Source: Octopus sinensis
Taxonomy: Eukaryota
Reading direction: 5' to 3'
Assembly: GCF_006345805.1 (NCBI RefSeq)
Contig: NC_043012.1
Location: 13,640,001-13,704,000 of the forward strand
DNA length: 64,000 nt
Part shown: one piece after another, positions 15,053 through 63,020 of the stretch
Position numbering within the stretch: the stretch's first letter is position 1
Layout of the letters: each line of letters starts with the position of its first letter
Notes under the pieces: model-generated
The model's input: the letters and a program-made list of their open reading frames with translations, nothing else
What the model was told of the DNA's origin: nothing
The model's database searches: none
Made by a program: the position numbers and the translations under genes

Positions 15053-15054
15053 CA

Positions 15055-15092
<38 letters not shown>

Positions 15093-15520: not shown

Positions 15521-15551
<31 letters not shown>

Positions 15552-16416
15552 TATAGTATATATTATATACTGTAAATTTTAAAGCAGAGGGTGCGTAAAT
15601 GTACTAAAAAATGTAGTAAATTCTGACTATATTTTAAATATTCATTTACTTTTAGTCTGACAAATGAGTGGTTTGTATAAAAATTGCAGCACCATTGATT
15701 TTAATCTGGACAACTTTGGCTCTTGAATAAATACATAGAACATAAATAAATACGTAGACTTACGTGTCAAAGTTCAGCGGTGGAATTGTTTAGAGTGCGT
15801 TGTATAGATATGATACTGCGAAGATATTTCTTTCATTTCCACCCACAGTGTTGAACGTTTCAGGTAATAGACTTCAGAAACAACTCTGTTGTGACTCGAT
15901 ACTTGGAGAACGAACCCCAAAATTACTTTCTCGGTCTTGGATATGTCAAAATATATGAAAGTTAAACCTAGATTCTCGGTAAAGAAACTATGCTTCCGAT
16001 GTATTTGGTGTCCTTTCAAGATGCACAGTATTTCGTGTCGTTGCTGAATAGATAACGGAGATGAAGTGCATAGTGTGGGGTGCACCTATGAAATCCAGGC
16101 ATTTCTTGTTATTATGAATGTTTGGAGAAAACGTTGGACGGAACATATTTCCAAATCATTGTGATTTCTAGTTGATGGTTGAAGGGAGTGCTCTGCAACC
16201 GAGACTGTATCTACTTTATATCCATTTGTCTCTGTGTATCGGTGTAGGTGGACGCGTGTGTACATACCTCTATCTATCTATATATTTCAATCTCCTTCTC
16301 TCTCTCTCTTTCTATCAATCTTACAGTCCCCCCTCTCTCTCTATATATATATAGAGAGAGAGAGAGAGATTCATATATATATATATATATATGATCTACT
16401 CTTATTATAAATATAT

Positions 16417-16463
<47 letters not shown>

Positions 16464-17110
16464 GTAAGTATGTGTATGTATGTGTATGTATATATATATA
16501 TGTATATGTATGTATTTATATGTATGTTTGTATGTATATAAGTTAATATTTGTTTGCCTTAATACATAATATATATACACATAGAACATGCTTCATTGGA
16601 GTAATTGATGTGAAAAGCGTTGTCTTTGTAAGATGATTTCTGAAAACTTAGTCTCAAATGACAATATGTTACAAACAAATTCGATAACAATGCAACACTC
16701 CTTGAAGAGAGGAGAGATGATTATATACATTACGAAAACTTAGCTTTTAGAACAGTCACTTAATTTGCCTGTATGTATTGAAAATTGTTATTAAACGGAA
16801 CTGAATAAAATCATTCTAGTCGTAAAAGTGCGTATTTTTGCTAATAAATTTCTATCAGGTAATTGTGATATAAAATCAATGAAGGTATTATCAGGAGCAT
16901 TACTCCAAACAAAGATATTATAACAACACCGTAACTCAATGACTAATGTTCACCAAATGTCGATTAATGAATAATAAACTTATGTAGCAGTAATTATTCC
17001 TATGTGTTTACCCTGAATGCGTGATATATGATAGAATATGTACGATCTTTATGAAGCAGCCTCTAAATGCTCGTCACTAAAAACACACATCAGTATTATG
17101 TTATTGTTAT

Positions 17111-17570
17111 GGGATCTTTTCGGTTTGACCGGTAGTTTTTTAAAATAATTTCCACGTAACTAAACACTTTTAAACTTCGTATACTGGTAGAATGTGTTTA
17201 TAAAACATCTTTTCTCTCGGCTTTATTGAGAAAATCGTATAGTTTGTAAGATATTTGTTATTTTTCTTCAATTTCTGCAATTTCAACCAACAAATGACGT
17301 CTATTGAGGTGAAAACATTCTGTGCCGCATGAATATGTCCCTCGTTTAAGAAACAGATTGGGTTTATTTACATTTCTGAAGAAAAAGAGATACCCTTGCC
17401 CCCACCCATAACCCTAACCCTAACCCTAACTAACCCTAACTAACCCTAACTCTAACCCTAACCCTAAAACAGATTGAAATGCAATAGATTGATACTAGGG
17501 TCATAATTATGGGTGACCATTTCATATGACACCGCTAGAAAAAAATGCCGTTCAAACCGAAAAGATCTTC
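17111..17570. mobile_element. Non-autonomous DNA element (MITE-like) with ~28-bp TIRs and an internal (TAACCC)n tract
   Basis: GATCTTTTCGGTTTGA[C/A]CGG[T/C]A.TTTTTT inverted at both ends. GTTA(T) on both flanks. Telomere-like repeats at ~17408-17466. Confidence 0.75.
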
Positions 17571-17611
17571 GTTATGAGAGCATTTAATTGCGAATATTTA
17601 ATGCCACTGAT

Positions 17612-17780
17612 GCGGCGAGCTGGTAGAATTGTTAGTATGTGAGGCAAAATGATTAACGGCATTTCGTCCGTCCACACGTTCCGAGTTCAAAATTCTGCCG
17701 AGATCGACTTTGTCTTTCATCCTTCGGGGTCTTTAAAATAAGTACCGGTTGAAAAGTTAGCCAATTTCTCGTATTCCTGA
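17612..17780 (+). mobile_element. SINE family B, diverged
   Basis: GCGGCGAGCTGGTAGAATTGTTAG head and ATCGACTTTGTCTTTCATCCTTCGGGGTC core. Confidence 0.65.
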
Positions 17781-18067
17781 ATTTGCGCCTAAATTTGAAC
17801 ACAATATTGAATACCACTTAGCTGTACGTAGGCAACATTACAGATGCACTCTTAAAATTCTCAAAACCGCCGTAACAACAGCAATATATACGAAGCCATA
17901 TATGCACATCATCACTACCTGTCTGATGAGTATACCAGGAACATGCATCACAAACTTATGTGCACGATATGGTGATCTCATATCAATATAAACAGCGCGT
18001 GACATCGCGCTGTTTATATTATTATTATTATTATCATCATCATCATCATTATTATTATTATTATTAC

Positions 18068-18115
<48 letters not shown>

Positions 18116-19041
18116 CATTAAACGCATATACTTAACGTATATACTTCGTGCATTTTCCAGTGGTTACAAAAGTATGGCAGAATACATACACTGTTAAAAC
18201 ACCTTAGTATCATGTACGGGCAAGATAACTCACTGTCAGTCACATTCGGGAGTAATGGAAATCGATGTTTCGCCATTTATTATTTTATTAGTATAAATTT
18301 ATTGCTAGCCGGTCCCGTAAATATTTCACGGAATCAATGGTATAATTATTCCGTTATACTGAAAACTTTACCCCAAAAATCTGAACGCGTAGACTGTGTG
18401 GTATCTATATGGAAATTTATTCGCTCATCTGCCACTCATTGAAAAGTGAAAGAGATTGGAATACGATGATTACTCAATGCACTTTATGTATACACCTTAT
18501 ATACTTTATGCACAATTGTGTATTAAGAATTAATATTCACTCTTACTTTTCCAAAAAAAGTTACATATGATACAACCTTTAGTTAAATTGCATATATCTA
18601 CCAAGTAAAGAAGCGTGAATATTTCAGGGAATTGTGCATATGTGCCTACGTTAAGTGATAGGTGATATAAAAAAAACCTTAGTTCAATTTTTTAAAAATA
18701 TAATTTTCACTATCCAGTCACTACTACCACCACCTCCATCACCTCCATCACCACCACTACCATCATCATCTCTCTCCCTCCTTTCTCTTACCTCTCACTC
18801 CCCCTCCCTCTGTCGCTCTCCGTCCTCTCTTCTCACTACGTTTCTTGAACTTCACCATCAGTGCATCACCTTTCTGCTGAAATTATATTTTTATCTCTCC
18901 TCCTCGAAGTAATATTACACCCCCACATCTCACGCCCAGGATGCTTCCCTCTCCCTCTATTCTTTCTCCCTCGTTTTCAGTAATCATATCACCGACGGGC
19001 TAAGTAACTCAGTGACAAGCAGAACAGCTATTTCTTCATGT

Positions 19042-19072
<31 letters not shown>

Positions 19073-22000
19073 AACAATTTTTTCACTTAAATAAATATAT
19101 TTATTTATATTATGTAGAGGGTATTACTATACATAAATGCCACACGCTAGGACGGATTCTTAAAGTCAAAACTACCAGAATAAATAAACACATTGTACCG
19201 AATGTAACTCTTGAAACAAGTCATTTGAAAACAGAATTTAGCTGCATATCACCGTTATTTATAATTTATTTTTGCTAAAGTTCACAGGGAATTTTCAGTT
19301 TGAAAATAGAATTTACAACAAGCTTCAATTATTTCCCAAGGATTCAATTTGAACTTAAGATAGTGATTATGGCAAGATCATATATCATTTCAGTCTTAAC
19401 GTCTCAAGATTAAAAAATGGTTCAACTTGCCTTACCCTCACCTACAATTAAAATAAAATCATTAGCGCCTTAAACGTCTTACTACATGGTGTTAATTTGT
19501 TAAAACAATGCAGTTGGGCTTATGAAGGAACTTGCAAAAAGATGCCTTCTTTTCTCACATAATCTATAGTTTCACAGTTATAAACACTAACATGATATAT
19601 AATTTAAAATATTCTCGCAGACCAACACCAGTGTTCTTGCTGATATTCTGCAGTATAAGAAACAACATCCTCCTTCAATACACAGTTCTTAGGGCCACAT
19701 TCGAACTTTTTACACAACCATTAGAACGTGAAGCGGCCTCACTAACGCAGGTTTCTGAGATTGCTGTGATCTGTAAACAGTTTTGAGTAGGAACCGGAAA
19801 GAGAAGTACAAACACGCAATACATATGTGCACACTGAATTCGTAAAAAGGAAGGGAAGAATTAAAACGGAATATCAAACAATAATATGATGGGGTGTATG
19901 CTATGTCTGACACCACTATCACGAAGCTTTGCTGTAATTTTCTCGCCATTTCTGTGTTAAACCATTGAGTATCACATCCTCAATTTTCCTAACAAAATTT
20001 TGCTACTACGCCAACAAATTCTTTCTACCTTCTTGTAGCCATCTCCAAGGAGATTAAATTCCTACCACCTGCATTTATTCAATCAACACATCAGCCGATT
20101 ATTTGACTCTTCTTTCCTACTTTGAAAAATTCCAACATATATTCGATAACTTATATATCCAACAAATACTTTATTTACGTAGAGTTTGAATAAACACAAT
20201 CCAGCTAAACTTTGAAGCAAAAGTTAACAAACTTATAATCAATTATTCACACCAGGCATGCTCTTTGAGCTATCGCTTTTGAAAATATTTCTATATTGAC
20301 ACATACACATATGTATATGTGTATCTGTCTAGATATATATCAAACGGAAATAGAAGGAACATAGAAACAGCACTGGAAGTTTTTTTTCTAATTTCAAAGC
20401 GTATTACCATTTAATGTTTGTGCATATATTGAAAATATAATGTATGGCAAATAATCATATATGTACTGGTTTCAACTCAGATTACGCATTTTAAGGATAA
20501 CTGAATATCTTTTATAAACTTTCTTTAAGTGTCGTTTGCATAAAGTCAAATGTAATATAGAATAAAATTAAATAAAATTATTTACCTATTATTTCTGTAA
20601 TATATATTGAATATTCATGACCTGGCCACTAAATGTTATTTTCTAAATCCATCATAGCTTGCCATAAATTACAAAAAATAAATAATGAAATAAATATGAA
20701 AGAAGAGAAAATAAAACTATTCACCTATTTTTCCCTATTATAATCTCCATGTGTATGTCCATAAGTCAGAATCTTGACAACTGAGATGTGTTAAACAATC
20801 GTAAGCCTATTTCAATTAAAACGAAAGCCTGTCCTTTTGATTAAGATTTACTTACAATAATGAAAGTAAAATTTGTTAACACATTAATAATTTCATGTTA
20901 GTCCTACTTGCCTACAATTGTAGGGTGAAACATGTACTGGATCTTTTCTGTTTCAAATTTTAGTTTCTTCAATTTCTGTTCCAATTGAATTTATATTTGG
21001 TTTAATGATGTAGTTTTATATGCTAATCATTGACATAAATTCATTTTCGTCATATATCAATAAACAAGGAGTGAATAGCTTTTCAAGTCTGCAAATTTTG
21101 TGTAATATTGGCCAGTTGTAAGCCACAAACACATTGATGACTATTTCCATATTAAGAAGCCAATCATGAGAACTGTTGAGAAGCGTTGACAAATATGTTC
21201 TACTCATTTAGGTGGTCGTGAGATGTGATAAAAATAACAGCTAAGTAAGCCTTAAATCACGCATCATCAATGTTTTTGTTTTGGTTCTTGCATAATCATA
21301 TGAATTCCTGCGTATACAATACAAATTTACAAAAGTTTTCTGAAAATTCAAAACAATAAGTTCCGAAGGTTTATAGGGCGCTACGTAAAGCAGAACTCTG
21401 CTGTTATTTCACCTGCAATCACGCATAAAATGGTAGCTTCCAAATGTTGTTTTCTGACTGGGTAAAACTTATCAAACTTTAAAGCTCTATAATTTTTTAA
21501 ATCATTTTCTGGAAAGGTGAAATATCGCTAAAGGTTCAGCGTAGAATCAGTAAACCAAATTCCAAAATGCTCAGTAAAGTCTGAAATTTCCACAGGCGTA
21601 GCCAAACGGAAAACATCCCATATCCTGAACTTACAAACGGCTGCATACCGTACAATTTCTTCTATGAACACGTTACAAACATTACAGGGGAAAAGTAGTG
21701 ATGAGCTCTCCAGTTTCGGCTCTTACCTATGCATCAAGTACTCTACATAAGTACTCTACATAAATTTGAACTTGACATGTGCTGATACATGGACTGTCCT
21801 GTTTTTTGAAAGATGGCAAGCAACGAATCTAAAATGACACTGAAAGTCCGACATCTGATTTAGTCTCTTGCTGCGATACTCTGGATATTGTGTGTGAAAA
21901 TATAATGTGAATAAAAGCAAAAAGATTCCAAATCAAAATAGGAATTGATAGTAAACAAGCTCACTTCGTTTAATCTAGCCATAGGCATGTAAATCCAAAC

Positions 22001-37377: not shown

Positions 37378-38580
37378 TTAGTCTTGTTGAGTAAACAGTA
37401 GACATGTAAATATTAATGAAACTATTACCGATATCACGATGCTAATTCTTAGAAATATATCATCCCATCGATTGTAGTCGGATATGCCAAGCCATTTTTT
37501 TCTTGGCCTTTCTTCTGGATTCAAAGTATTCGATTGTGCCGAGGCAATTATTGAAACATCGGCAATTTGGTTAGCATGGGGTCTCTTTCTATTTTCATTC
37601 GGTGAATTTGATTTCACTTCATCAGAAGTTTGTATTACATACAATTTGCTTATAATTACCGAACCAATTGCAGTGAATCCACTCATCATCGATAATAGCA
37701 TTAAATATAACATAAGAAGGCAAGGATATTTTGAATTTTTTGGTGTTGTCTTCTCCATCTGAACAAGATACAACACGTTTGATAAAAATGTTGTCATGGC
37801 TAGAAAAACTTTCTTTCCAGATTCAGGAGGTAGAAGGAAAACGAAAATAGTTAAAACGGTCATTATTACAGACGGAATCAGCATAGCTATGACTTCTATG
37901 GTAAGTTTACGTCGTAGATACATCGGTGCAAATGCGTAGCTAAATTCATCGTTCGAGGCATTTACCGTACCATGAAGCGTGATATCCCACTCATAGTTTT
38001 CTAGCCAATTTAGATCATAGTAATGGAGAGATTTTATTCTCGTGTGCTGCGTGCTATGCAAAGCAACACACATGTAAATTTCGCACATATGCTTATCAAA
38101 TGGGTAAGTATATGCGTTGACTTGACAATATGTATTAAGTAATTTAAAAGAATACATAACCACATGTCCATTACTAAAAATCCATATTTCAAGGAAGTCA
38201 TCTGTTTCTTCTGAGTTACCCATTGAATTGCATAATACAATAGGTGGTTTCCAAACATTTTCTTTTCCTAGATGAATATTTGTAATGTTATTATAATCCG
38301 AGGGGTCCCACTGTAAATTTTCATCAGTCCATTGTAGTCCAATGTAGTACTGAGCCGTCAGTAAGTTATTCACTAAGTCCAAATCATTGAATGTGTGAAG
38401 CATTATGGTAGCATATATATCGACCGGTGTTGCCAAATCAATAACCGGTCTTATATATTTGTTATAATTGGATAGTAATTTGATGTGTAGTAGTCTTTCA
38501 TCATTATCCGTAGGGTTAGAATTTGCTATCAATATATTTGGAGTCAGTACCAACATACGATATAGTATTAACAAAAACAT
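37378..38580 (-). CDS. Chemotactile receptor, single exon, 400 aa, with non-canonical M2 pore (here CR-B)
   Basis: Intact ORF paralogous to the other two. Cys-loop C-QVNAYTYPFDKHM-C. M1-M2 linker reads PESGKKVFLAMTTFLSN instead of PESGEKVSLATTIFLSN. Confidence 0.93.
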   Translation of the reverse strand: MFLLILYRMLVLTPNILIANSNPTDNDERLLHIKLLSNYNKYIRPVIDLATPVDIYATIMLHTFNDLDLVNNLLTAQYYIGLQWTDENLQWDPSDYNNITNIHLGKENVWKPPIVLCNSMGNSEETDDFLEIWIFSNGHVVMYSFKLLNTYCQVNAYTYPFDKHMCEIYMCVALHSTQHTRIKSLHYYDLNWLENYEWDITLHGTVNASNDEFSYAFAPMYLRRKLTIEVIAMLIPSVIMTVLTIFVFLLPPESGKKVFLAMTTFLSNVLYLVQMEKTTPKNSKYPCLLMLYLMLLSMMSGFTAIGSVIISKLYVIQTSDEVKSNSPNENRKRPHANQIADVSIIASAQSNTLNPEERPRKKWLGISDYNRWDDIFLRISIVISVIVSLIFTCLLFTQQD

Positions 38581-39846
38581 TTAGACTCTTTTTTATATTC
38601 AAATCTGTCTGGTTTAGTGTTTATGCTTAAGTTTTCGTCATGAATATAAATTTGTTAAAGTATGTATATAAATCGTTACACTTCTTTGTCTGAGATGAAT
38701 GATATTTCCGATGTTTTTGGATACTGAATAGGTTACCAAAATATATTATAACATAAATTCTAGTCTATTACAATAGAAAACAAAAGAAATGGAATTTTTC
38801 CTGCTGAATACAATTTCATATTTTTCTAAAATGTTGCTTTATTTTATTGTAATATATAAAACATATTTTTCATGATGTGCGTATTTTAAATTCTTTATCT
38901 GAAGAGAATTTGCCAACTGTGCTATCGTAAAAGGTCGCACATTTCTTCAGCTTATAAATTCCATGAATCTAGTTGGTATTTTTCAAGTCTGTTAACATAT
39001 TTTTAATCACAAGTAGATCTTTCCAGTTATTTTATAATTATTATATTTCAGGATATTTTCGCTTATTCCAGCGCCGACATCTGGATGAACGTAGACCCTT
39101 TGTGGAAATTTTGAAATGAATTTCTCCAAATATATACGTGACTGTGACATAACATGATAAATTCGCCACCTGGAAGAGATCTGTGAATCATAAGATGAAG
39201 GCGTAAAAAATGACAATGTTTGAAATAAAGCATACGCTACAAGACGAAGGCACCTTACTCTAGACAAGCAGTTAAAATACATAGGAAAACAAGTGAAAAA
39301 GTGATGAAGTCAGAATAAAACAAAGTATCGTTGCAACATATATTGCATACATTCATGTACACGTGAGGTTTTGGCTCATAACCCGAATTATAATCACTTG
39401 AACTTCAGAAACCATAAACAATGCTTATCACAGTTAATAAATTCCAATTAATAGATTAATTTCGTAATTATTTCCGTCGTTATCGTCATCACCAGCAGCA
39501 GCATCATGGTAATAACATGTGGCTTATCTTCCTAAATTTATTGATGTAAACAAAGACTTTTTTTTAGATATTTTATTCACTCATTTAATATAATTTTATT
39601 AAACAAAACACAAACGGTCTTATAGGAACAATCTCAACAGCTAATTGTGTTATCGTGTCAAAAGAAAAGCAAGCAGTCACGAAATTTTATGAAACAGTAA
39701 TTAATATGTTGTAAAGTTTGTTGCTAAATCTATTAAATAAATTCACGCAAAATTAGTTCCTTGACTGCGACAGTATGACTGAGTCCACGTTAAAGTAACT
39801 GAATGCATGTGCGTGTGTATGTAAGCATGCTGTATATGTATATGCG

Positions 39847-39926
<80 letters not shown>

Positions 39927-39960
39927 TGTATGTGTGTGCGTGTGTGTGTGTGTGTATGTG

Positions 39961-40337
39961 AGTTAGAGGTTCAGCAACAATCTAAGAGATAATAAATATC
40001 TAATATATGTCCATAGTAGAAAAAGCTGTTAGAGTTTAGTATTTATTCTTATTCATTTATTTGTTTTTATTTATCTTTTCATCTACTTTTTTATTTACTT
40101 ATTTCATTTCCTTAGTTTGCTCACTTATGCATATGATTGTAATCAATTAATTATCAGATATAAATGAATGTTTAGAGGCTGATGTTTCTCCATTGATCAT
40201 CCTCTACATTTTCTTATTTCCAATATATATATATAAGAAGATGAAATTTGATATTAACATATATACTTACGTATCTATATATCTATATATTCTTATATAA
40301 ACATACATGTATATATATATATAATATATATTATATA

Positions 40338-40387
<50 letters not shown>

Positions 40388-40394
40388 GTGTGTG

Positions 40395-40433
<39 letters not shown>

Positions 40434-40813
40434 GTGTGTGTGTGTGTGTGGTGTGTGTGTGTGTGTGTATGTGAGTTAGAGGTTCAGCAACAATCTAAGA
40501 GATAATAAATATCTAATATATGTCCATAGTAGAAAAAGCTGTTAGAGTTTAGTATTTATTCTTATTCATTTATTTGTTTTTATTTATCTTTTCATCTACT
40601 TTTTTATTTACTTATTTCATTTCCTTAGTTTGCTCACTTATGCATATGATTGTAATCAATTAATTATCAGATATAAATGAATGTTTAGAGGCTGATGTTT
40701 CTCCATTGATCATCCTCTACATTTTCTTATTTCCAATATATATATATAAGAAGATGAAATTTGATATTAACATATATACTTACGTATCTATATATCTATA
40801 TATTCTTATATAA

Positions 40814-40823
<10 letters not shown>
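39961..40823. repeat. Tandem duplication, period 513 bp, with an apparently identical ~350-bp unique core (39961-40310 and 40474-40823)
   Basis: AGTTAGAGGTTCAGCAACAATC...ACATACATGT appears twice, separated by (TA)n(TG)n tracts. Confidence 0.9.
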
Positions 40824-40856
<33 letters not shown>

Positions 40857-40866
40857 TATATTTATA

Positions 40867-40982
<116 letters not shown>

Positions 40983-44061: not shown

Positions 44062-45294
44062 TTATTCCCGTGGAATAAACAACAAACATGTAAATATTAT
44101 TGAGGTTATGACAGATGTAACAATGCTTAGTTTTAGAAATACGTCATCGAGCCGTACGTAGTCGGATATGCAAAATATTCGTTTCCAATGGGGCTTCTCT
44201 CTGATCAGTGAATCTGATTGTGCCTCGGAAATTGTTGAAATATCTGCAACTTTGTTAGTATGAGATTTATTCAAATTTTGATCTGACGTGTTCGATTTTC
44301 TGAAGGAAGATGACTGATCTACGTACAACTTACTTATAACCACAGAACCAAGTGTAGCGATTCCGCTTAACATTGACAATAGCATTAAATATAACATTAG
44401 CAGTGAAGGATATTTTGTATTGGTCGGAGTAGTTTTATCGATCTGGACAAGGTACAAGACGTTCGATAAAAATATTGTAGTCGCTAGTGAAACTTTTTCC
44501 CCTGATTCAGGAGGCAGAAGGAAAACGAAAATAGTTAAAATAGTCATCATTACTGTTGGAATAAGCATAGCAATAATTCCTACAGTAAGTTTTCGTCGTA
44601 AGTACATCGGTGCAAAAGCGTAACTGAACATGTCGTCCATACCATTCACTTTACCAGTGAAATTGATAGCCCACTTATAGTTTAGTGTAAACTTTGAATC
44701 TCCGTATATGAGTTCCTTTATTCTGGTGTGGTTAATAGTATGCAAAGCGACACACATGTACATTTCGCACGTATGTTCATCAAATGGATAGGTGTAAGCG
44801 TTGACTTGACAATAAGTGTGCAGTAATCTGAATGACCAAAAGTTAGCCCAACCCCTATAAGTAATACTTATTTCACCTACACCATCGCTTTCTTCCGATT
44901 TGTCCATTGAATTGCACATTTTAATAGGTGGCGTCCATATCTTATCTTTGGGTAGATATATACTCGTAATGTTGTTATAGTCCGACGGGTTCCAAGTCAA
45001 CTTTTCATCGTTCCACATTAATCCAAAATAATAGCGTGCCCTTACAATGTTATTTACAAAGTCCAAATCATAAAGCGTTTGAAGGTACAGTAAAGCAGTT
45101 ATATCCACTGCATTGGTCAAATTAATAACTGGTCTTATACTTTTACTATAATTAGCTAACAAATTGTCTCGTAATAGCCTTTCATCGCCATACGTAGGGC
45201 TAGAATTTACTATCGGTACACTCGAAATCAGAATAAAAACAAGATATATCACAAATATCATTGTGTAGTTTACTTCTAAAAAGTGAAATTTCAT
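44062..45294 (-). CDS. CRT1: Chemotactile receptor CRT1 (CR518)-like, single exon; Met12 (45261) is the likely start, giving 399 aa
   Basis: Intact ORF. Long stretches (PTYGDERLL, YLPKDKIWTPPIKMCNSMDKSEE, VALHTINHTRIKELIY, the whole M1-M3) match my recollection of O. bimaculoides CRT1. The orthology is recalled and needs an alignment; the CR family call is supported directly by the motifs. Confidence 0.9.
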   Translation of the reverse strand: MKFHFLEVNYTMIFVIYLVFILISSVPIVNSSPTYGDERLLRDNLLANYSKSIRPVINLTNAVDITALLYLQTLYDLDFVNNIVRARYYFGLMWNDEKLTWNPSDYNNITSIYLPKDKIWTPPIKMCNSMDKSEESDGVGEISITYRGWANFWSFRLLHTYCQVNAYTYPFDEHTCEMYMCVALHTINHTRIKELIYGDSKFTLNYKWAINFTGKVNGMDDMFSYAFAPMYLRRKLTVGIIAMLIPTVMMTILTIFVFLLPPESGEKVSLATTIFLSNVLYLVQIDKTTPTNTKYPSLLMLYLMLLSMLSGIATLGSVVISKLYVDQSSSFRKSNTSDQNLNKSHTNKVADISTISEAQSDSLIREKPHWKRIFCISDYVRLDDVFLKLSIVTSVITSIIFTCLLFIPRE

Positions 45295-47558
45295 TTGGTC
45301 TGTGTTTTATTACTTCCTCATTAATTTTTAGTAATAGAACTTATTTATTAAATTCATGGTGTTGTTGATAAAAAGAAAATATCGTCAGGAGAGCTTCCTA
45401 ACATACACATTATACTTTTATCATACGACAGAGAAAAGGCAAAAATCTGCATATAAAATACAAATTAATAAACTTCACAGAATGCCGATTTTACTGAAAA
45501 ATATGAAAATTCTAATACCTTCACGAAAGGTTTTGTGCTGTCCACTTTGTCAGTATCTATTTGAGTTCTGCGTATGATGAGGAATTTGCAAGGTGTAGAG
45601 GCGCATGCGTTCTGTCAGCGTCACATTTTAAAACTTCCACAAAAATATGTTGGTTGAGGATTTATTATTGTCAGTTAACATGTTGGGTTTCGCATTAGAT
45701 GTTTCAAAGAATGTTATAATTATTGTTTTGTTCCTCTAGCTGTCTTTATCCGTGTGAAGCCGTAGAACGATGTTTTCGTGTGAAAATCAAGAAGAGAATT
45801 CTTTCAAACGTGTGAATCTAAATAATGTGGTAACACATCGAGCTAAATCCGATCGGTGATTTGGTGGCTAAATTCATGCAAAATGGCAATGCTTGGAATA
45901 CAGTCGTCTGCTATAAAAGTCAATGAATTTATACTCGAGGAAAAAGATATAGATGAATATTTAAACAATGGTTGCTGGAGTAGAAACAAAGACGACAGTC
46001 CCGAGATGAAATTACACAAATGTCAATAAAAGCATTAATAATGTAAAGAAAATTTTAATTGCATCAGTAATACTGTACCATATTCAATGTATATGTGTGT
46101 GTGAGTGTGTGTGTGTATATATATAAATATATATATAAATGTATGAGTGTGTATGCGTACGTGAATGCACTCATATGAACATATGCATGCGTTTGTATCG
46201 AACGTTTGACATGCACATATATACTTATGTACGTATTCATTTATGCGTGTGCTTGTGTATCTGTATGTGAGCCTGTGCATGCGTAGACTGATGTCTGAAT
46301 CTGTGCAGATGAGTGCATTCATTTATTGAACGTGAGGAAGGGTTATTGATGAAATTACACGAAATTGTTAGGTTTCATAAGTGTACGGAATGAAATATTA
46401 ACAACTAATTGAAGTAAACAAAGCCAAATGCAGTTCTCCGCTCTTGAGAGCCTCTAGAGACAATTTTCAAAACATTTATTTTGGAGCCGAGATGTAATCT
46501 GCTAATATTGATTCGAAAATGTAACACAAATATATTAGCATTAATAATCTCTTTAGCCGTTACGTGGTGTATTGTTACTAATATATTAATTTTATCATCT
46601 AATCATTGGGAAAACCAAGAATAAATAGCAATTATTATTTTAAAATATGAATTATCTGTTTATGAATTTATACAATGAACGATGTACATAAATTACCTAT
46701 ATAATTATACGAATACATAGATAAAATCTATATAATTGCATAAGCTTACGCTCAATAAATAGGCTATTATTTTCACAGATGAGAGAAGGACAACTTATTT
46801 GGTTTCGATTTCTCATCGGTAGTTTTCAATTTATTAGTCTGAGGGAGATTATAGAATCTGATTTAAATACAGAGTGAGTGAGAGAGAGGAGAGGAACAGA
46901 CAGACAGACAATCAGACAGACGGACACACTGACAGACGGAGACAGAATGAGTATCCTATGATGATACATTAAAAACCGCAATAAAGAGCAGAAACTTCTT
47001 TTATGCGAATACATATGCACACGTAGCTTGAAAATGTGCATAGATTAGAGAAAATAAAAGCAAGGCAGCGTCGTTTTACATAGGTTGTTAAATAAATTCG
47101 ACAGCATTCACGATATCATGAGAGGTTTAACAAGAAAACTTAACTGTGAGGCTGTAAAATATACAAAGTAAAGGACAATGATAGTGCAATTCTAGGTAGA
47201 AGCGATATATTTCTACAATGAGGTTAAATACATCATTACGAGACAAAGATAATAATATATTTTTTTAGCTTCCGAATTTAAAAACACAAGCACAAATATA
47301 AGTACGTGCATTTTCACACGCAACATATATTTATGCAAATAAATACATATATATATACTTTGGTTTTGTGCTGAGTTTTATTTGAGAACATAATCTTTAT
47401 GGAGAATGGCGATTTGACGTCTATATCTAGCATGTTGACTGTCCACTTTTCGTTTTCAGTCCTTAATTGGTATACATATATATTTTAATCTTCGGATTCT
47501 TTTTAATATGCTAGACCACTGGTTTTAATTGATAAATATCAATTTCTACCCTTAATTA

Positions 47559-47595
<37 letters not shown>

Positions 47596-47602
<7 letters not shown>

Positions 47603-47912
47603 ATCACGTGACCGACCAGACAATCAGATGTTGTTACACATCGCTGGTCATAATGCGTTCGCATTGTTTTAGCCTTCGAATGACGCAAACCCCGCTGGCT
47701 AAGCGAGCAGGCCAACAGAAGAAAGAGTGGGAGAAAGAGTGGTGAAAGAGTACAGCAGGGAGTGGTGAAAGAGTACCACCCCCTGCCGGAGCATCGTGGA
47801 GCTTTTTAGGTGTTTTCGCTCAATAAACACTCACAACGCCCGGCCTGGGAATCGAAACCGCGATCCTACGACCGCGAGTTCGCTGCCCTAACTACTGGGC
47901 CATTGCGCCTCC
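47596..47912 (-). mobile_element. tRNA(Arg)-like SINE family C, full length
   Basis: TGGAGGCGCAATGGCCCAGTAGTTAGGGCAGCGAACTCGCGG...GGTTTCGATTCCC head; TCACGTGA repeat tail. Confidence 0.85.
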
Positions 47913-47914
47913 AA

Positions 47915-47947
<33 letters not shown>

Positions 47948-48206
47948 CATGCATGTATATATATATATGTATGGAGAAAAATATACATACGCCCACATAC
48001 ATAGAGAATATATTATTGATAGATGCATAAGTAGTACTAATAGTAAAATGTAATATTTATTGCCCACTTAAAATGGTTTTGCGTTACAACAGAAAATGCA
48101 GGTCCCCTCCTGTTAAGTAACGCAGTATTCTATCTTTTAAGACAACACGAACTTTAAGTGGGATATATATATATATATAAATAATATATATATATATATA
48201 TATATT

Positions 48207-48528
48207 ATGTGAAAAAGAAAGATGAATAATCTTGTAGTAGATTAATCAAAAGTTTAACCGATACCTTAGTAGCAAAAATCACAGCAGTAAACAGCACGGT
48301 TGGAGGTACAACCATCTGGCGTTGCAACCGTGCGTTGGTGCGGATAATTGAAATTAAAACATTATTGGTGAATTGAAGAAATGGAGCTGAACGCAGATTG
48401 AACAGAAATCGTTTTATTTCATTCTACACGTGTTTCGAAAGGCACAAATTACCAAAATCCGATTGAATAATGGGACCATATTGTGTCTTTCTCTTCAGGA
48501 AGAAAAAAGGATTTTCCAACGGATTTCC
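48207..48528 (-). mobile_element. Penelope-derived terminal-repeat element carrying a hammerhead, copy 1
   Basis: About 6 differences from 62633-62935 over ~300 bp. Ends in a (TA)n tract. Confidence 0.8.
48415..48508 (-). ncRNA. Type I hammerhead ribozyme (copy 1)
   Basis: Minus strand TTTTCTTC-CTGAAGA-GAAAGACACAA...TTGTGCCTTTC-GAAA-CACGTG-TA-GAATGAAA: intact core, 11-bp stem II with one mismatch, palindromic stem III, GUA cleavage triplet at 48427-48425. Confidence 0.8.
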
Positions 48529-48982
48529 TTCTACGGCTTCACACGGATAAAGACAGCTAGAGGAACAAAACAATAATTATAACATTCTTTGAAACATCTA
48601 ATGCGAAACCCAACATGTTAACTGACAATAATAAATCCTCAACCAACATATTTTTGTGGAAGTTTTAAAATGTGACGCTGACAGAACGCATGCGCCTCTA
48701 CACCTTGCAAATTCCTCATCATACGCAGAACTCAAATAGATACTGACAAAGTGGACAGCACAAAACCTTTCGTGAAGGTATTAGAATTTTCATATTGTGT
48801 GTGTGTGTGTGTTTAAATGCATGTATAGACTTATACAGACAACCACACAAGTGCGCCCATTCAGAGTCCCAAGCGCATGGACGTGCGCCTATGCAATCAT
48901 TCACACACAGGTGGAAGCAACAGTGGATATACATTTCAGTATATAGTTATATAAATACAGATGCGCATGTGTATATATGTGT

Positions 48983-50619: not shown

Positions 50620-51041
50620 TTGTGCAAAAACAATGAGATGCAGAGAGTGAGTTAATGTGCAGCACTATAAATAAATCATTTGTGAAGGTCGGTTACATCG
50701 GCAAGGGTTCTAGTTGATCCAATCAACGTAACAGCCTGCTCATAAAGTTTACGTGCAAAGGGCTGAGCGATCCACAGACACATGTACTCATTAACACAGT
50801 TCACGGAAGGATTCGGCGTGACACAGAAAGTGAAAACGCTGTCACTTTGAAATACAGGTACAACAGAAAGAGTAAGAAAGATCGAGAGAAAGATGCAGTA
50901 GAAGATTCCAGCAGGGTTCGCCATCACACCTTACCGGATATACGTGGATCTCCAGGTGTTTTCGTTCAATCAACACTCACAACACCCGGTCTGGGAGTTA
51001 GCGAGTCCGCTGCCCTAAACAACAGGCCGTTGCGCCTCCAC
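50620..51041 (-). mobile_element. SINE with a family C head and a different body
   Basis: GTGGAGGCGCAACGGCCTG..GGGCAGCGGACTCGC head, followed by a body unlike the other two family C copies. Confidence 0.6.
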
Positions 51042-59329: not shown

Positions 59330-60456
59330 TTATTTCAATTAATAAAAAGTAAAAAAAAAAGAATTATATATTGCTAATCCGGTTCAAGTGGATATGTAAA
59401 CGCGAATTTTTAGAAATATCACATCAAGTTGAACGCAATTAAAAATGTCCTTACTCCATTTTCTTTCTTGAACAGTTTTCGACCTTACTTACCTTTTCGG
59501 ATCGGGATGTGAAAGGTATTGAAATATTCGTAGTTTTCTAAATTTGATAATATTTTTATATGATGGATTCGATTTTTCTGCATCAGATGTTTGATTTAGA
59601 TACAACCTACTGACAAGTACTGAATCAAATGTGCTCATTCCACTCAGCAGTGATACTAATAATATATAGTACGTAAAATGTGAAAGATATTTTGAATTTT
59701 TTGGTGTATTCTTACCGATTTGCACAACGTACACGACATTTGATAAAAAAAAATATCGTGGTATCCAGAGGAAGTTTTTCACCTGATTTAGGTGGCAGAA
59801 GGAGAAAAAATAGATAAAACAGTCAACATTACAGTCTCAATTATCATAGCTACTATACCAAAATTGAATAAGTAAATCGAAGCATATGCGTAACTGAGAG
59901 AGAATTTCAGACCCTTCATTTCTCCACGGATCTGAACATCCCATTCATAGTTTTGTATATTGTTTAAATCATTATGTTTAAATGCTTTTTTCTTGAATGG
60001 ATTGGCTTCAGCAAAGCCGTACACATGGATAAAAGTAAGCATTGACTTCACAAAATGTAAGTAATAATTTCTAAGACCACATTTCCACAGATCCATTACT
60101 ATAAAGAATTAGTTCGCGTAAACACTCTTTCTCTTCTGAACCCTTCAATGCATTACAAATTGCTAAATTTGGTATCCAAAGCTGATCTTTTGACACATTA
60201 AACACTGGTAATTATATAGAGCAATCATTTCCATGTTAGATTTTCGTCGACCCATCGTTGCTCTAAAATGTAGCGATCCTTAAGTACGTTATTTCAAAAA
60301 TCCAATTCATGAAGTCTCTCAAACTGTAAGACAACATATATCTCAACAGCTGTAATTAGATTAATGACATGTCATATATATGACATATATAGCGCTGTAA
60401 CGTAATGTCGATAGAATCTGAGTAAAAATGGAACCAGAATATTATATCAGTATCAT
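59330..60456 (-). pseudogene. Degenerate chemotactile receptor pseudogene (CR-psi)
   Basis: Stitched frames give VINLITAVEIY..LHELDF*NN..RWVDENLTW, KDQLWIPNLAICNALKGSEEK, CEVNAYFYP, QNYEWDV, LPPKSGEK, LSNVVYVVQIGKNTPKNSKY and VQLDVIFLKI, collinear with the intact CRs. Several stops, frameshifts and deletions. Confidence 0.9.
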
Positions 60457-60640
60457 GATTCGGAATAATTAGAAAGGTTGAATCTCAGTTCTGCTAATTT
60501 GCTTTATCAGATTATTTAAGATTTGTAATTCGTTTTAGTCAGTTGCTATTTATATTAAGTGCATTCATGTTATAGTTGATAAAATGAAATATTATAAACA
60601 GATTCCCAATATATACAATATTTTCTATATTAGGAAACTG

Positions 60641-61012
60641 TTAGCACGCCGGGTGAAATGCTTAGCTGCTGCAACGTTCTGATTTCAAATTCCGCCGAGG
60701 TCGATTTTGCCTTTCATCCTTTCGGGGTCGATTAAATAAGTACCAGTTACGCGCTGGGGTCGATATAATCGACTTAATCTGTTTGTCTGTTCTTGTGTGT
60801 CCCCTCTGTGTGTATCCCATTGTGGGTAGTAAAGAAATAGGTATTTCGTCAGCCGCTACGTTCTGAGTTCAAATTTCGCCGAGGACGACGTTTCTTTTCA
60901 TTCTTTCGGGGTGGATAAATTAAGTACCAGTTGCGTATTGGGGTCGATCAAATCGACTGGCTCATCCGCCAAAATTTCGAGCATTGTGCCTTGAGTACAA
61001 AACAATATAGAG
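60641..61012 (+). mobile_element. SINE family B dimer, upstream of CR-psi
   Basis: Two cores joined by AAAGAAATAG|GTATTTCGTC; terminal AAAATTTCGAGCATTGTGCC tail. Confidence 0.85.
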
Positions 61013-61861: not shown

Positions 61862-62300
61862 TATGGCTGCCCCATCGTTATCGAGTATGGCCATTGCACG
61901 AAGCTTAACTGTTACTGGTGCTGTGATCGAATGTGACTTTTTAGTCCGGCTAAAGATCTACAATGTCTTGTAAAGAATTGGCAACTAAAGCCTTTACTGG
62001 TTATTGCCGGCTGTAGGTGTAACTGGGCTTCATGTACCTTTGCATGTCGTTTAAGTCCTCCTGCCGAATTACACTCTCTTCTACACGCCCGAATGATATG
62101 ATTAGTATGGTGTGTTGCACCACCACCAGTGGCCAGGTTGTCACTCATCTGTCTCACTTTATTACTACGAAGATGACTCTTGAGTCCAGCTTTACTGAAG
62201 CAGGGTCTTGCACAGACACTGCATGTCAGGTCACTTTCGAGTGCTACTGGTAACATGTAACCCAGTACAACCTGTTGCATGGTCGGGTCGTCGGCGACGA
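61862..62300 (-). mobile_element. Probable LINE 3' end (RTE-like) encoding three C2H2-type zinc fingers
   Basis: CSVCARPCFSKAGLKSHLRS, ACRRECNSAGGLKRHAKVH and CQFFTRHCRSLAGLKSHIRSQH, then a short 3' UTR (GGCCATACTCGATAACGATGGGCAGCC) ending at (TA)n. Confidence 0.6.
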
Positions 62301-62544
62301 AACCGGCAAATAAGCGTAATGGAAAACGGAGATAAACGCACAAGATGTTATTTAAATGATTTATGGTGATATAAATAACATCTTGTGCGTTTGTCGCCAT
62401 TTTCCATTACTCTTATATTCTCCAAAATACATCTCACTTTTCGGAATTATTGCCCATGTAAATGTCGTTACTAATTTCTCTGGCACTTAAGCGACATTTG
62501 GCTACTTTGGTAAGTTTTTCTCTGGATATTTCCTTGTTAATGAT

Positions 62545-62631: not shown

Positions 62632-62632
62632 A

Positions 62633-63020
62633 TGTGAAATAGAAAGATGAATAATCTTGTAGTAGATTAATCAAAAGTTTAACCGATACCTTAGTAGCAA
62701 AAGTCACAGCAGTAAACAGCACGGTTGGAGGTACAACCATATGGTGTTGCAACCGTGCGTTGGTGCGGATAATTGAAATTAAAACATTATTGGTGAATTG
62801 AAGAAATGGAGCTGAACGCAGATTGAACAGAAATCGTTTTATTTCATTCTACACGTGTTTCGAAAGGCACAAATTACCAAAATCTGATTGAATAATGGGA
62901 CCATATTGTGTCTTTCTCTTCAGGAAGAAAATAGGAAATCCGTTGGAAGAACAAAAACAGAACAGAGGCGGAGCAAAAACAAATCGAACTATGCTCCTAA
63001 GAGCCCATGGCGAAACTTTT
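62633..63020 (-). mobile_element. Penelope-derived terminal-repeat element carrying a hammerhead, copy 2
   Basis: Near-identical to 48207-48528; bounded by (TA)n on both sides. Confidence 0.8.
62842..62931 (-). ncRNA. Type I hammerhead ribozyme (copy 2)
   Basis: Same core and stems as copy 1; GUA triplet at 62852-62850. Confidence 0.8.

What the first reader, a model, noticed from the sequence alone, without database searches (positions are those of the whole stretch)
45500..48796. Perfect 268-bp inverted copy of the CRT1 upstream region captured at the 5' junction of a hammerhead retroelement
48529-48796 is the exact reverse complement of 45500-45767, which lies about 200-470 bp upstream of CRT1 and contains the shared motif. 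It abuts hammerhead element copy 1. At the junction, 16 bp (TTCCAACGGATTTCCT, 48514-48529) are the reverse complement of what follows in the same orientation in copy 2 (AGGAAATCCGTTGGAA, 62933-62948). This reads as two template switches during a recent Penelope-type insertion: first onto the element's own opposite strand, then onto DNA or RNA about 3 kb away. The result is a duplicated candidate promoter facing away from CRT1, and a substrate for a 2.8-kb loop or an inversion.
Basis: partly seen in the sequence, partly recalled or inferred. Interest (0 to 1): 0.7.

Follow-up and report, generated by a model that had tools for sequence, protein, structure and literature searches.

The report
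Inverted promoter-region copy at retroelement junction
In the Octopus sinensis genome, a 268-base stretch from just upstream of the taste-by-touch receptor gene CRT1 has recently been copied backwards next to the broken front end of a small mobile element 2.8 kb away; this is a real and tidy scar of sloppy copying during DNA insertion or repair, with no sign so far that it does anything.

Summary
48529-48796 is the exact reverse complement of 45500-45767. 48514-48529 is the exact reverse complement of the sequence that follows the shared part in element copy 2.

The window is Octopus sinensis chromosome CM016874.1. The gene at 44062-45294(-) is the syntenic orthologue of O. bimaculoides CRT1.

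Arm 1 is ancestral: two other octopus genomes align straight through it. Arm 2 is derived. O. bimaculoides has one copy only, and its synteny resumes exactly at arm 2's outer edge, in a (GT)n/(TA)n microsatellite. Zero differences in 268 bp dates the copy to under about 1.5 My, after the split from O. vulgaris.

The neighbour is a 5'-truncated copy of a ~390-bp non-autonomous element that sits in (TA)n. It has a complete hammerhead core with a palindromic helix III, but no Rfam hit, and no Penelope ORF lies nearby.

The most likely origin is one insertion-coupled template-switch event. The 16-mer looks like a twin-priming inversion (4-nt duplication, 2-nt filler) rather than a jump onto the element's own opposite strand. 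Whether the 268-nt template was DNA or RNA is unresolved.

The copy lacks the most conserved, gene-proximal part of the upstream region, so calling it a duplicated promoter is unproven. This is a known kind of event and of moderate interest.

The parts
44062..45294 (-). CRT1 orthologue: an intron-free ORF of 410 aa encoding a Cys-loop (nicotinic-like) chemotactile receptor
   Evidence: Pfam Neur_chan_LBD and Neur_chan_memb. 87% identical to O. bimaculoides 'Chemotactile receptor CRT1'. Syntenic with the O. bimaculoides CRT1 locus L008.
45445..45544 (-). Most conserved block of the CRT1 upstream region. It contains TTTTTCAGTAAAAT (TCAGT is initiator-like, or a splice signal). Only its distal half (45500-45544) lies within the duplicated segment.
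   Evidence: 98% identity to O. bimaculoides and 90% to a third species in 50-bp bins. The reading of the motif is inference.
45500..45767 (-). Arm 1: the ancestral copy, 206-473 bp upstream of the CRT1 ATG
   Evidence: Exact reverse complement of arm 2. Colinear alignment runs through both of its ends in Logan contigs L002-L006 of another octopus species and in O. bimaculoides L008. 92.5% identical to O. bimaculoides against 79-80.5% for its flanks. Weak homology to the upstream region of a paralogue.
45768..47357 (.). Distal CRT1 upstream region, forming the inner part of the 2,761-bp spacer between the exact arms. It is ancestral and is conserved in O. bimaculoides.
   Evidence: L008 7863-9087 and 9154 onward align colinearly with window 47357-46116 and 46155-43849 at 88-89.5%.
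48165..48206 (.). (TA)n microsatellite at the 3' end of element copy 1. It is the target and/or the tail.
   Evidence: Sequence. Copy 2 is flanked by (TA)n on both sides.
48207..48511 (-). Element copy 1: a 5'-truncated copy (positions 84-388) of a ~388-bp non-coding element
   Evidence: 98.0% identical to copy 2 over 305 nt, with 6 differences. Copy 2 continues 83 nt further 5'.
48425..48498 (-). Type I hammerhead-like motif. The parts are CUGAAGA (48498-48492), a long stem II (48491-48438), GAAA (48436-48433), a 2-bp helix III inside the palindrome ACACGUGU, and the predicted cleavage site after A48425.
   Evidence: The descriptor scan hits only the two copies; simulations give a mean of 0.03 hits per window. 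Stem II is predicted by RNAfold. No Rfam hit.
48512..48513 (.). 2-nt filler (TT) between the truncated element and the inverted 16-mer
48514..48529 (+). Inverted 16-mer: the element's sense sequence (positions 72-87) lying on the opposite strand to copy 1. It overlaps copy 1's first four bases (TCCT), which gives a 4-nt inverted duplication.
   Evidence: Exact match to the reverse complement of 62933-62948.
48529..48796 (+). Arm 2: the derived inverted copy of arm 1. It reads in CRT1-sense, distal to proximal, on the + strand.
   Evidence: 268/268 match. Absent from the orthologous position in O. bimaculoides, where homology resumes at 48796/48797.
48797..48812 (.). (GT)8 microsatellite, the first ancestral sequence to the right of the composite insert
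   Evidence: L008 5070-5294 aligns with window 49021-48796 at 85%. In O. bimaculoides the (GT)n is preceded by TATATAA.
62632..63019 (-). Element copy 2: the longer reference copy, embedded in (TA)n, carrying the same hammerhead motif (CUGAAGA from 62923, cleavage after 62850)

Best explanation
This is a real, young (<~1.5 My), lineage-specific scar of one complex insertion event.

A short non-autonomous retroelement carrying a hammerhead motif integrated into a (TA)n(GT)n microsatellite 3.5 kb upstream of CRT1, and was 5'-truncated at element position 84. The 5' junction was not closed by simple end joining. Instead, a single DNA strand was made on two templates in succession. One template was 268 nt of the CRT1 upstream region lying 2.8 kb away. 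The other was 16 nt of the element RNA immediately 5' of the truncation point.

On the element's sense (minus) strand the product reads: target (AC)n, then 45500->45767, then AGGAAATCCGTTGGAA (element antisense), then AA, then the truncated element.

The simplest route uses second-end priming, as in twin priming. The 3' end on the far side of the break (ending ...ATAT) anneals at AUAUU/ATATT at 45500-45504 and copies to 45767. It then switches at a 1-4-nt microhomology onto the element RNA, copies 16 nt, and is joined to the first-strand cDNA with a 2-nt filler.

Shown: the anatomy, which arm is ancestral, the recency, and the microsatellite target.

Inferred: that an element-associated reverse transcriptase did the copying, the direction of synthesis, and whether the 268-nt template was DNA or a promoter-associated RNA.

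The product is probably neutral. It is a 268-bp perfect inverted repeat around a 2.76-kb spacer that contains CRT1's conserved distal upstream DNA. Recombination between the arms would flip that spacer.
For: - Arms are 268/268 identical, and they are the only such pair in the window.
- Arm 1 is colinear with two other species across both of its ends.
- O. bimaculoides has one copy only, and its synteny resumes exactly at 48796/48797.
- Local O. sinensis-O. vulgaris substitution divergence is 1.81%. With the 2.5-My split quoted in bioRxiv 10.1101/2023.05.16.540928, P(0 of 268 differences) is 0.008 if the copy predates the split, and the 95% upper age is 1.5 My.
- Arm 2 begins 18 nt from the truncation point of copy 1. 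Those 18 nt are a 2-nt filler plus an exact 16-nt inverted copy of the very next element sequence, with a 4-nt overlap. A coincidence between two unrelated events is very unlikely.
- Microhomologies exist at two junctions. The 16-mer and the arm share a T, with TCCT against TCGT around it. At the outer junction there is ATAT, using the O. bimaculoides TATATAA|(GT)n as a proxy for the target.
- Both element copies sit in (TA)n.
- PLE insertions are reported to favour (TA)n/(CA)n microsatellites and to form inverted 5' structures (PMC8557442).
- A purified PLE protein cleaves and extends both target strands in vitro and cuts AT-rich DNA (PMC11167929).
Against: - No independent reads or second O. 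sinensis assembly could be examined. Look-ups of junction-spanning ORFs found nothing.
- The O. bimaculoides interval has two N gaps (L008 5523-6754 and 7483-7847), so absence of a second arm there is not absolute.
- No target-site duplication can be read, because the flanks are microsatellites.
- The element's link to a reverse transcriptase is indirect. No RT ORF is nearby, Rfam finds no hammerhead, and my hammerhead descriptor was written after I had seen the sequence.
- Classical PLE inverted copies carry the element's 3' part, not a 16-nt piece from next to the breakpoint.
- Nothing distinguishes copying by an RT from copying by a repair polymerase.
Confidence: 0.55

Rival explanations
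1. One first-strand cDNA (the + strand) left the element RNA at position 84. It copied 16 nt of an antisense element strand, then switched again to the + strand of the CRT1 upstream region (DNA, or an upstream-antisense RNA) and copied from 45767 down to 45500. It was then joined to the (TA)n(GT)n target.
For: The same anatomy and microhomologies fit this route. The arm would lie in the same sense as the element, as in U6-L1-type chimeras made by RT template switching (PMC4476161, listed; my own knowledge of that literature). The stop at 45500 could be annealing of ...CATATT to the (TA)n target, or run-off at the 5' end of a divergent promoter transcript.
Against: The first switch needs an antisense copy of the element as template. 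During first-strand synthesis the only antisense strand is the nascent cDNA itself. Self-copying would retain the forward copy of the 16-mer, which is absent. An independent antisense RNA or a second cDNA must be assumed, and that assumption collapses this route into the two-ended model.
Confidence: 0.15
2. A repair or replication rearrangement with no reverse transcriptase involved. A double-strand break or stalled fork at or in the element's 5' part, possibly long after insertion, was repaired by microhomology-mediated template switching (MMBIR/FoSTeS or polymerase-theta end joining). This copied 16 nt and then 268 nt from nearby DNA and deleted the element's 5' 83 nt.
For: All junctions show 0-5-nt microhomology or short filler. 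The donor lies only 2.8 kb away on the same chromosome, which is typical of local templated insertions (established knowledge of MMBIR and TMEJ). A second near-perfect local duplication flanked by microsatellites (39833-40894) shows that this region is prone to DNA-level rearrangement.
Against: The 16-mer is the reverse complement of sequence that is no longer present at the locus in forward orientation. A DNA-only route therefore needs the full-length element, or a sister or homologue copy, as template, followed by loss of exactly that segment. The breakpoint coincides with what otherwise looks like an ordinary 5' truncation of a retroelement in its preferred (TA)n target.
Confidence: 0.2
3. 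An assembly or polishing artefact. Arm 2, or its perfect identity to arm 1, was created by a chimeric long read or by consensus polishing in a microsatellite-rich region of GCA_006345805.1.
For: There is no independent sequence of this interval. Both outer flanks are microsatellites, where assemblies are weakest. Polishing with multi-mapped reads can erase real differences between repeats. A second 100%-identical local duplication exists in the window.
Against: Missed-adapter or fold-back artefacts give adjacent palindromes. They do not give a 268-bp patch 2.8 kb from its source, joined through a 16-nt inverted piece of the neighbouring element with microhomologies. The junction structure matches known biology. 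Synteny with O. bimaculoides resumes to the base at the patch edge.
Confidence: 0.1
4. An older inverted duplication kept identical by gene conversion between the arms, with the element inserted next to it by chance.
For: Inverted repeats can homogenise by conversion. The N gaps in O. bimaculoides leave a little room for an old second copy.
Against: At the orthologous outer junction O. bimaculoides has different sequence. 268 bp is close to the minimum efficient tract for conversion. The chance juxtaposition with the 16-nt inverted element piece would be left unexplained.
Confidence: 0.03

Closest known systems
L1 twin-priming 5' inversions (Ostertag & Kazazian model; see PMC2837659 and PMC2912911, listed)
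   Same: The 5' piece is inverted relative to the 3' body. It derives from the RNA segment immediately upstream of the breakpoint. There is a small duplication (4 nt) and a filler (2 nt) at the inversion junction. The inverted cDNA is covalently attached to the DNA strand coming from the far side of the target.
   Different: The inverted piece is only 16 nt. It is attached not to plain target DNA but to a 268-nt copy of a sequence 2.8 kb away. The element is not a LINE, and no target-site duplication is readable.
Complex tandem/inverted insertions of Penelope-like elements and their non-autonomous 'non-LTR retrozyme' derivatives (PMC8557442, PMC7229834, PMC11167929, bioRxiv 10.64898/2026.07.22.740005)
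   Same: A type I hammerhead core with a very short helix III inside a palindrome. Low GC, with size in the 170-400-nt range. Insertion into (TA)n, 5' truncation, and an inverted structure at the 5' end. A PLE protein primes on both target strands in vitro.
   Different: No RT/GIY-YIG ORF or pLTR is nearby. Both copies are monomers, not tandems. Stem II is unusually long (54 nt) and Rfam models do not score it. The inverted piece is not a 5'-truncated copy that carries the element's 3' end. Capture of local host DNA at the junction is not a described PLE feature in the papers read.
Chimeric retrocopies made by RT template switching (U6-L1 and similar; PMC4476161)
   Same: A foreign sequence is fused to the 5' end of a truncated retroelement at a junction with little or no homology, presumably in one integration event.
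   Different: The captured piece comes from a non-genic (or not known to be transcribed) promoter-proximal region 2.8 kb away in cis. It is separated from the element by an inverted 16-mer. RNA origin is unproven.
Local templated insertions and inverted duplications from microhomology-mediated repair (MMBIR/FoSTeS, polymerase-theta end joining), including L1-associated rearrangements (PMC11702581)
   Same: Nearby donor, inverted orientation, short microhomologies and filler, microsatellite context.
   Different: One templated piece derives from retroelement sequence that is absent from the final locus in forward orientation, which points to an RNA or transient template.

Membership tests
Hammerhead ribozyme, type I (PLE/retrozyme-style minimal variant) | Conserved catalytic core: C3-U-G-A-N-G-A9, G12-A-A14, the A15.1-U16.1 pair, and H17 at the cleavage site | tested here: met
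   CUGAAGA ... GAAA-C-ACGU-G-UA is present on the minus strand of both copies. These are the only hits in 64 kb, against a mean of 0.03 in simulations. The descriptor was written after I had seen the sequence.
Hammerhead ribozyme, type I (PLE/retrozyme-style minimal variant) | Helices I and II flanking the core, with a G10.1-C11.1 closing pair; helix III short and palindromic so that the ribozyme can act as a dimer | tested here: met
   Stem II GAAAG.ACACA/UGUGC.CUUUC is predicted by RNAfold. Helix I has 7 of 8 pairs. ACACGUGU is an 8-nt palindrome. Overall folding energy is not better than that of shuffles (z about 0).
Hammerhead ribozyme, type I (PLE/retrozyme-style minimal variant) | Scores against curated hammerhead covariance models | tested here: not met
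   No hammerhead family at gathering threshold on the window, or at E<=10 on 20 kb or on the 561-nt region. The 54-nt stem II probably defeats the models.
Hammerhead ribozyme, type I (PLE/retrozyme-style minimal variant) | Self-cleavage activity, and covariation across homologues | not testable with these tools
   Only two copies, 98% identical, are available. No eukaryotic genome-wide DNA search is on hand.
Penelope-like element or its non-autonomous derivative (non-LTR retrozyme) | RT plus GIY-YIG endonuclease ORF (autonomous element) | tested here: not met
   The element has no long ORF. No RT or GIY-YIG domain is found in window ORFs near either copy. At most it is non-autonomous.
Penelope-like element or its non-autonomous derivative (non-LTR retrozyme) | Tandem or partial-tandem organisation (pLTR, or multimers) | tested here: not met
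   Both copies are single units bounded by (TA)n.
Penelope-like element or its non-autonomous derivative (non-LTR retrozyme) | Insertion bias for (TA)n/AT-rich microsatellites, 5' truncation, and inverted structures at the 5' end | tested here: met
   compared with PMC8557442 and PMC11167929.
Penelope-like element or its non-autonomous derivative (non-LTR retrozyme) | Sequence relationship to the pLTR or 3' end of an autonomous PLE in the same genome; a multicopy family | not testable with these tools
   There are two copies in the window and none in the 30-kb O. vulgaris or 21-kb O. bimaculoides loci. No repeat library or octopus genome search is available.
Twin-priming-type 5' inversion | The inverted 5' segment derives from RNA just upstream of the breakpoint, with a small duplication or deletion at the inversion junction | tested here: met
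   Element positions 72-87 are inverted and the body starts at position 84. That gives a 4-nt overlap (TCCT) and a 2-nt filler.
Twin-priming-type 5' inversion | The whole insertion is flanked by a target-site duplication, and the inverted segment abuts pre-existing target DNA | tested here: inconclusive
   The flanks are (TA)n and (GT)n, so no duplication can be read. The inverted segment abuts the newly made arm 2, not ancestral DNA.
Chemotactile receptor (CR) gene CRT1 | Cys-loop receptor ORF orthologous and syntenic to O. bimaculoides CRT1 | tested here: met
   Pfam domains. 87% identity to named CRT1, against at most 62% to other CRs. Colinear flanks and the same downstream neighbour gene.

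The most novel reading that the evidence does not exclude
The reverse transcriptase that mobilises this hammerhead element (PLE-type, priming on both target strands) used a chromatin-tethered, promoter-associated RNA of CRT1 as a second template in cis. Candidates for that RNA are an upstream-antisense transcript, a 5' leader, or an intron end; arm 1's edge lies 5-6 nt from a conserved TCAG|T signal. If so, hammerhead-element insertions can copy and relocate regulatory modules within the fast-evolving chemotactile receptor cluster. The resulting perfect inverted repeat would then segregate as an inversion polymorphism that swaps CRT1's conserved distal upstream DNA for retroelement sequence.
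Probability: 0.1. Interest if true: 0.6.

Novelty: new member of a known kind. Interest (0 to 1): 0.35.

Why it matters
This is a clean example, resolved to the base and polarised by outgroups, of a chimeric retroelement 5' junction in a cephalopod. It combines a twin-priming-like micro-inversion with a 268-nt templated patch from 2.8 kb away.

How Penelope-like and retrozyme elements integrate is still poorly understood. Young, unmutated junctions like this one constrain the models: priming from both ends, use of microhomology, and microsatellite targets.

The event sits directly upstream of CRT1, the best-studied octopus taste-by-touch receptor. It duplicates the best-conserved long stretch of that gene's upstream region, and so creates a possible inversion substrate and a possible ectopic regulatory fragment.

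It gives one sharp prediction: it should be absent in O. vulgaris, and may be polymorphic in O. sinensis.

On present evidence it is most likely a neutral scar.

Tried and rejected
1. Independent confirmation of the junctions. Exact look-ups of the two junction-spanning ORFs (48719-48934-, 48424-48573-) in public assemblies, including Logan, found nothing. Even the source assembly has no such calls, so this says nothing either way.
2. The O. vulgaris empty site. The only O. vulgaris locus I could reach (L007, through the CR-A orthologue P0021) covers window 1-20867 only. No annotated O. vulgaris CRT1 or CR-B orthologue exists in the protein collection, so the decisive comparison could not be made.
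3. Rfam hammerhead models at three scales gave no hit. I fell back on a hand-written descriptor with a simulated null.
4. Extension of the element beyond the (TA)n. A TTATTGCCCA similarity in the left flanks of both copies is not significant (score 27 against shuffles of 24.7 +/- 4.3).
5. More copies of the arm or of the element. Sensitive BLAST of the window, L007 and L008 found none.
6. Snap-back (self-primed) synthesis as the origin of the 16-mer. I rejected this because the forward copy of the 16-mer is absent.
7. 5' transduction from a source element next to arm 1. I rejected this because arm 1's inner edge is colinear with the outgroups.
8. Whether contigs L002-L006 are transcripts, which would show that the arm is transcribed. 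They end in (TA)n on both sides, so they are genomic contigs. Their SRA runs are not mentioned in the paper library.
9. Shared 9-mers among the four CR upstream regions: essentially none. Only the CRT1/CR-B pair shows weak homology.


Full report
**Where the window comes from.** The 410-aa ORF at 44062-45294(-) is found, by exact protein look-up, on Octopus sinensis chromosome CM016874.1 of assembly GCA_006345805.1. It carries the two Cys-loop receptor domains. It is 87% identical to the protein that UniRef names 'Chemotactile receptor CRT1' of O. bimaculoides, and at most 62% identical to other receptors of the family. The O. bimaculoides CRT1 locus (L008, CM046615.1) is colinear with the window on both sides of the gene and has the same downstream neighbour. 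The window also holds two further intact receptor genes (10526-11719-, 37378-38580-) and a decayed one (about 59348-60443-).

**The observation.** 45500-45767 and 48529-48796 are 268/268 reverse-complementary. The match extends to 271 nt with one mismatch. At 95% identity or more and 100 bp or more, the window contains only this pair, the two element copies and one tandem duplication. Arm 1 lies 206-473 bp upstream of the CRT1 ATG. On the + strand arm 2 reads in CRT1-sense, from distal to proximal, so it points away from CRT1.

Left of arm 2 lies a copy (48207-48511, with (TA)n at 48165-48206) of an element whose second copy is at 62632-63019. The shared 305 nt differ at 6 positions. Copy 2 continues 83 nt further on the right. 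In copy 1 the homology stops at 48511. It is followed by TT and then by TTCCAACGGATTTCCT (48514-48529), the exact reverse complement of the next 16 nt of copy 2 (62933-62948). The last T of that 16-mer is also the first base of arm 2. Every factual statement in the finding is correct.

**Which arm is the original.** Five Logan contigs from another octopus species (L002-L006; protein 81.5% identical) align colinearly from the CRT1 coding region through the whole of arm 1 and beyond both of its ends. They stop only at the microsatellite at ~46134. These contigs end in (TA)n on both sides, so they are genomic. O. bimaculoides does the same: L008 9154-11447 aligns with window 46155-43849 at 89.5%, and L008 7863-9087 with 47357-46116 at 88%. 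Arm 1 is therefore ancestral, single-copy upstream DNA.

O. bimaculoides has only one copy of the segment in the 21 kb examined (L008 9555-9820). Its homology with O. sinensis to the right of the structure (L008 5070-5294 aligning with window 49021-48796) ends exactly at the outer edge of arm 2, in the (GT)n/(AC)n repeat. Beyond that point O. bimaculoides has unrelated sequence. Two N gaps in L008 (5523-6754, 7483-7847) mean that absence of a second copy is strongly suggested, not proven.

**Age.** In 17.9 kb of alignable non-coding DNA from the same window, O. sinensis and O. vulgaris differ by 1.81% in substitutions. The split is quoted as 2.5 My in the O. vulgaris genome paper (bioRxiv 10.1101/2023.05.16.540928). 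On that rate two paralogous 268-bp copies would gain about 1.9 differences per My. Zero differences has probability 0.008 if the copy is as old as the split, and the 95% upper bound on its age is ~1.5 My, barring gene conversion. The structure should therefore be missing from O. vulgaris. I could not reach that interval: the only accessible O. vulgaris locus covers window 1-20867.

**What the neighbouring element is.** It is ~388 bp, non-coding and AT-rich. Copy 2 is embedded in (TA)n on both sides, and copy 1 has (TA)n at its 3' end.

On the minus strand both copies carry a complete type I hammerhead core: CUGAAGA, a long stem II closed by G-C, and GAAA. Helix III is a two-base-pair helix lying within the 8-nt palindrome ACACGUGU, followed by GUA as the cleavage triplet. 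Helix I has 7 of 8 pairs. A descriptor scan finds only these two sites in the window, and first-order Markov simulations give 0.03 hits per window. RNAfold predicts stem II. A very short helix III inside a palindrome is the signature of the dimer-acting hammerheads of Penelope-like elements and amphibian retrozymes (PMC7229834).

Several points count against a firm call:
- Rfam's hammerhead models give nothing at any threshold.
- The fold is not more stable than shuffles.
- The two copies amount to one independent observation.
- My descriptor was written after I had seen the sequence.
- No RT/GIY-YIG ORF is in the window.
- Neither copy is tandem.

The safe description is 'a non-autonomous element bearing a hammerhead motif, with the target preference of Penelope-like elements'. 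'Penelope-type' remains a hypothesis.

**Reading the junction.** On the element's sense (minus) strand the structure reads 5'-(AC)8 | 45500...45767 | AGGAAATCCGTTGGAA | AA | TCCTTTTTTCTTC-CUGAAGA...element...(TA)n-3'. Four things follow.
- The 16-mer is element antisense, covalently continuous with the arm on this strand.
- It covers element positions 72-87 while the body starts at position 84. The bases TCCT are therefore present twice in inverted orientation, and 2 nt of filler separate the two parts.
- That is the anatomy of a twin-priming inversion as described for L1: a second 3' end primes on the same RNA just upstream of where the first cDNA stops.
- The alternative, a first-strand cDNA jumping 'onto the element's own opposite strand', lacks a template. 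The only antisense strand in the intermediate is that cDNA itself, and self-copying would leave the forward 16-mer in place. It is not there.

The strand that primed on the element RNA ends with the arm sequence. The arm was therefore made first on that strand (from 45500 to 45767), or the same product was made in the opposite direction on complementary templates.

Microhomologies are short but present. The 16-mer and the arm overlap by one T, with TCCT against TCGT around it. At the outer junction the arm ends in CATATT, where the O. bimaculoides proxy for the target reads TATATAA|(GT)n. An ...ATAT-3' end from the cut (TA)n could therefore anneal at 45500-45504.

A purified PLE protein cleaves AT-rich DNA and extends both target strands in vitro (PMC11167929). 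PLE insertions are described as favouring (TA)n/(CA)n microsatellites and forming inverted 5' structures, with target-site duplications often unreadable (PMC8557442). The structure fits that biology without being a textbook case of it.

**What cannot be decided.** Three questions stay open: whether the 268-nt template was DNA or RNA, which direction synthesis ran, and whether an RT or a repair polymerase did the copying.

A DNA-only rearrangement (MMBIR or polymerase-theta type) explains the microhomologies and the nearby donor. It has to assume a full-length element, or a sister copy, as transient template for the 16-mer, followed by exact loss of that segment.

An assembly artefact is unlikely given the junction anatomy and the base-exact resumption of synteny. 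It cannot be excluded without reads. The window contains another 100%-identical local duplication (39940-40239 = 40453-40752), so either the region is rearrangement-prone or the assembly is imperfect in microsatellite-rich DNA.

**Is arm 2 a duplicated promoter?** Arm 1 is the best-conserved long stretch upstream of CRT1: 92.5% identity to O. bimaculoides against 79-80.5% for the flanks. It also shares recognisable blocks with the equivalent region of the paralogue at 37378-38580 (AATAATTATAA, ATGTTAAC, GCAAATT). It is probably regulatory.

However, the most conserved block is 45445-45544 (98% and 90% in the two outgroups), and only its distal half is in the arm. The copy stops 5 nt before a conserved TTTTTCAGTAAAAT (TCAGT is initiator-like; it could also be a splice signal) and lacks the 206 bp nearest the gene. 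No ORF or gene lies downstream of arm 2 on the + strand. Promoter activity of the copy is untested and, in my judgement, not likely.

The clearer consequence is structural. A 268-bp perfect inverted repeat flanks 2.76 kb that includes CRT1's conserved distal upstream DNA (45768-47357). Recombination between the arms would invert that segment and put retroelement sequence next to the CRT1 proximal region. This is inference, and it can be tested by PCR.

**Verdict.** The Penelope label is unproven, the first 'switch' is better read as twin priming, and the promoter claim is weak. The event is a new, well-polarised example of known junction pathologies of retroelement integration. It is not a new kind of system. 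Interest is moderate to low (0.35). It would be higher only if the template proved to be a promoter-associated RNA, or if the repeat proved to drive a functional inversion polymorphism at CRT1.

Noticed in passing
window 301-408 (-): U6 spliceosomal RNA match (64 bits against a gathering score of 44, E=8e-14). It has a 3-nt deletion and several changes in the conserved central region, so it could be a U6 gene or a retro-pseudogene.
   Followed up: no
window 39833-40894: Near-perfect tandem duplication with a 513-bp period. The 300-bp core 39940-40239 is 100% identical to 40453-40752, and the unit is embedded in (GT)n/(TA)n microsatellites. It is a second very young local duplication, or an assembly expansion.
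   Followed up: partly
window 45445-45544: The most conserved block upstream of CRT1 (98% to O. bimaculoides, 90% to a third species). It contains TTTTTCAGTAAAAT, which could be an initiator-like TCAGT or a splice signal. It lies just beyond arm 1's gene-proximal edge, so half of it is not duplicated.
   Followed up: partly
window ~47640-47912 (-): A SINE-like element with a tRNA-like head (GGTTTCGATTCCC box B-like) lies inside the spacer between the arms. ARAGORN calls no tRNA. A 43-nt relative lies at 50954-50996. It has no counterpart in the alignable O. bimaculoides sequence.
   Followed up: no
window 59348-60443 (-): A decayed chemotactile-receptor pseudogene. tblastn fragments in several frames show 30-55% identity to family members.
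   Followed up: no
window 61912-62426: A 162-aa ORF with C2H2-type zinc-finger matches overlaps a ~120-nt near-perfect hairpin at 62300-62426, which draws sub-threshold microRNA-family hits. It lies ~200 bp from element copy 2 and is probably part of another transposon.
   Followed up: no
window 6623-7184, 10259-10464, 12587-12792, 14792-15002, 60634-60958: A family of short interspersed repeats of about 190 bp, with copies 83-95% identical in both orientations. It is also present in the O. vulgaris locus L007.
   Followed up: no
L007 (O. vulgaris OX597828.1) 10001-20403: The annotated O. vulgaris orthologue of the receptor gene at window 10526-11719 is a 329-aa model spanning 10.4 kb. Its N-terminus is truncated and its C-terminus is unrelated, while the O. 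sinensis ORF is an intact 397 aa. This is probably a gene-model error.
   Followed up: no
L008 (O. bimaculoides CM046615.1) 5523-6754 and 7483-7847: Two assembly gaps (runs of N) lie in the CRT1 upstream interval of the O. bimaculoides reference, both bordered by microsatellites. They limit any empty-site inference from that species.
   Followed up: yes
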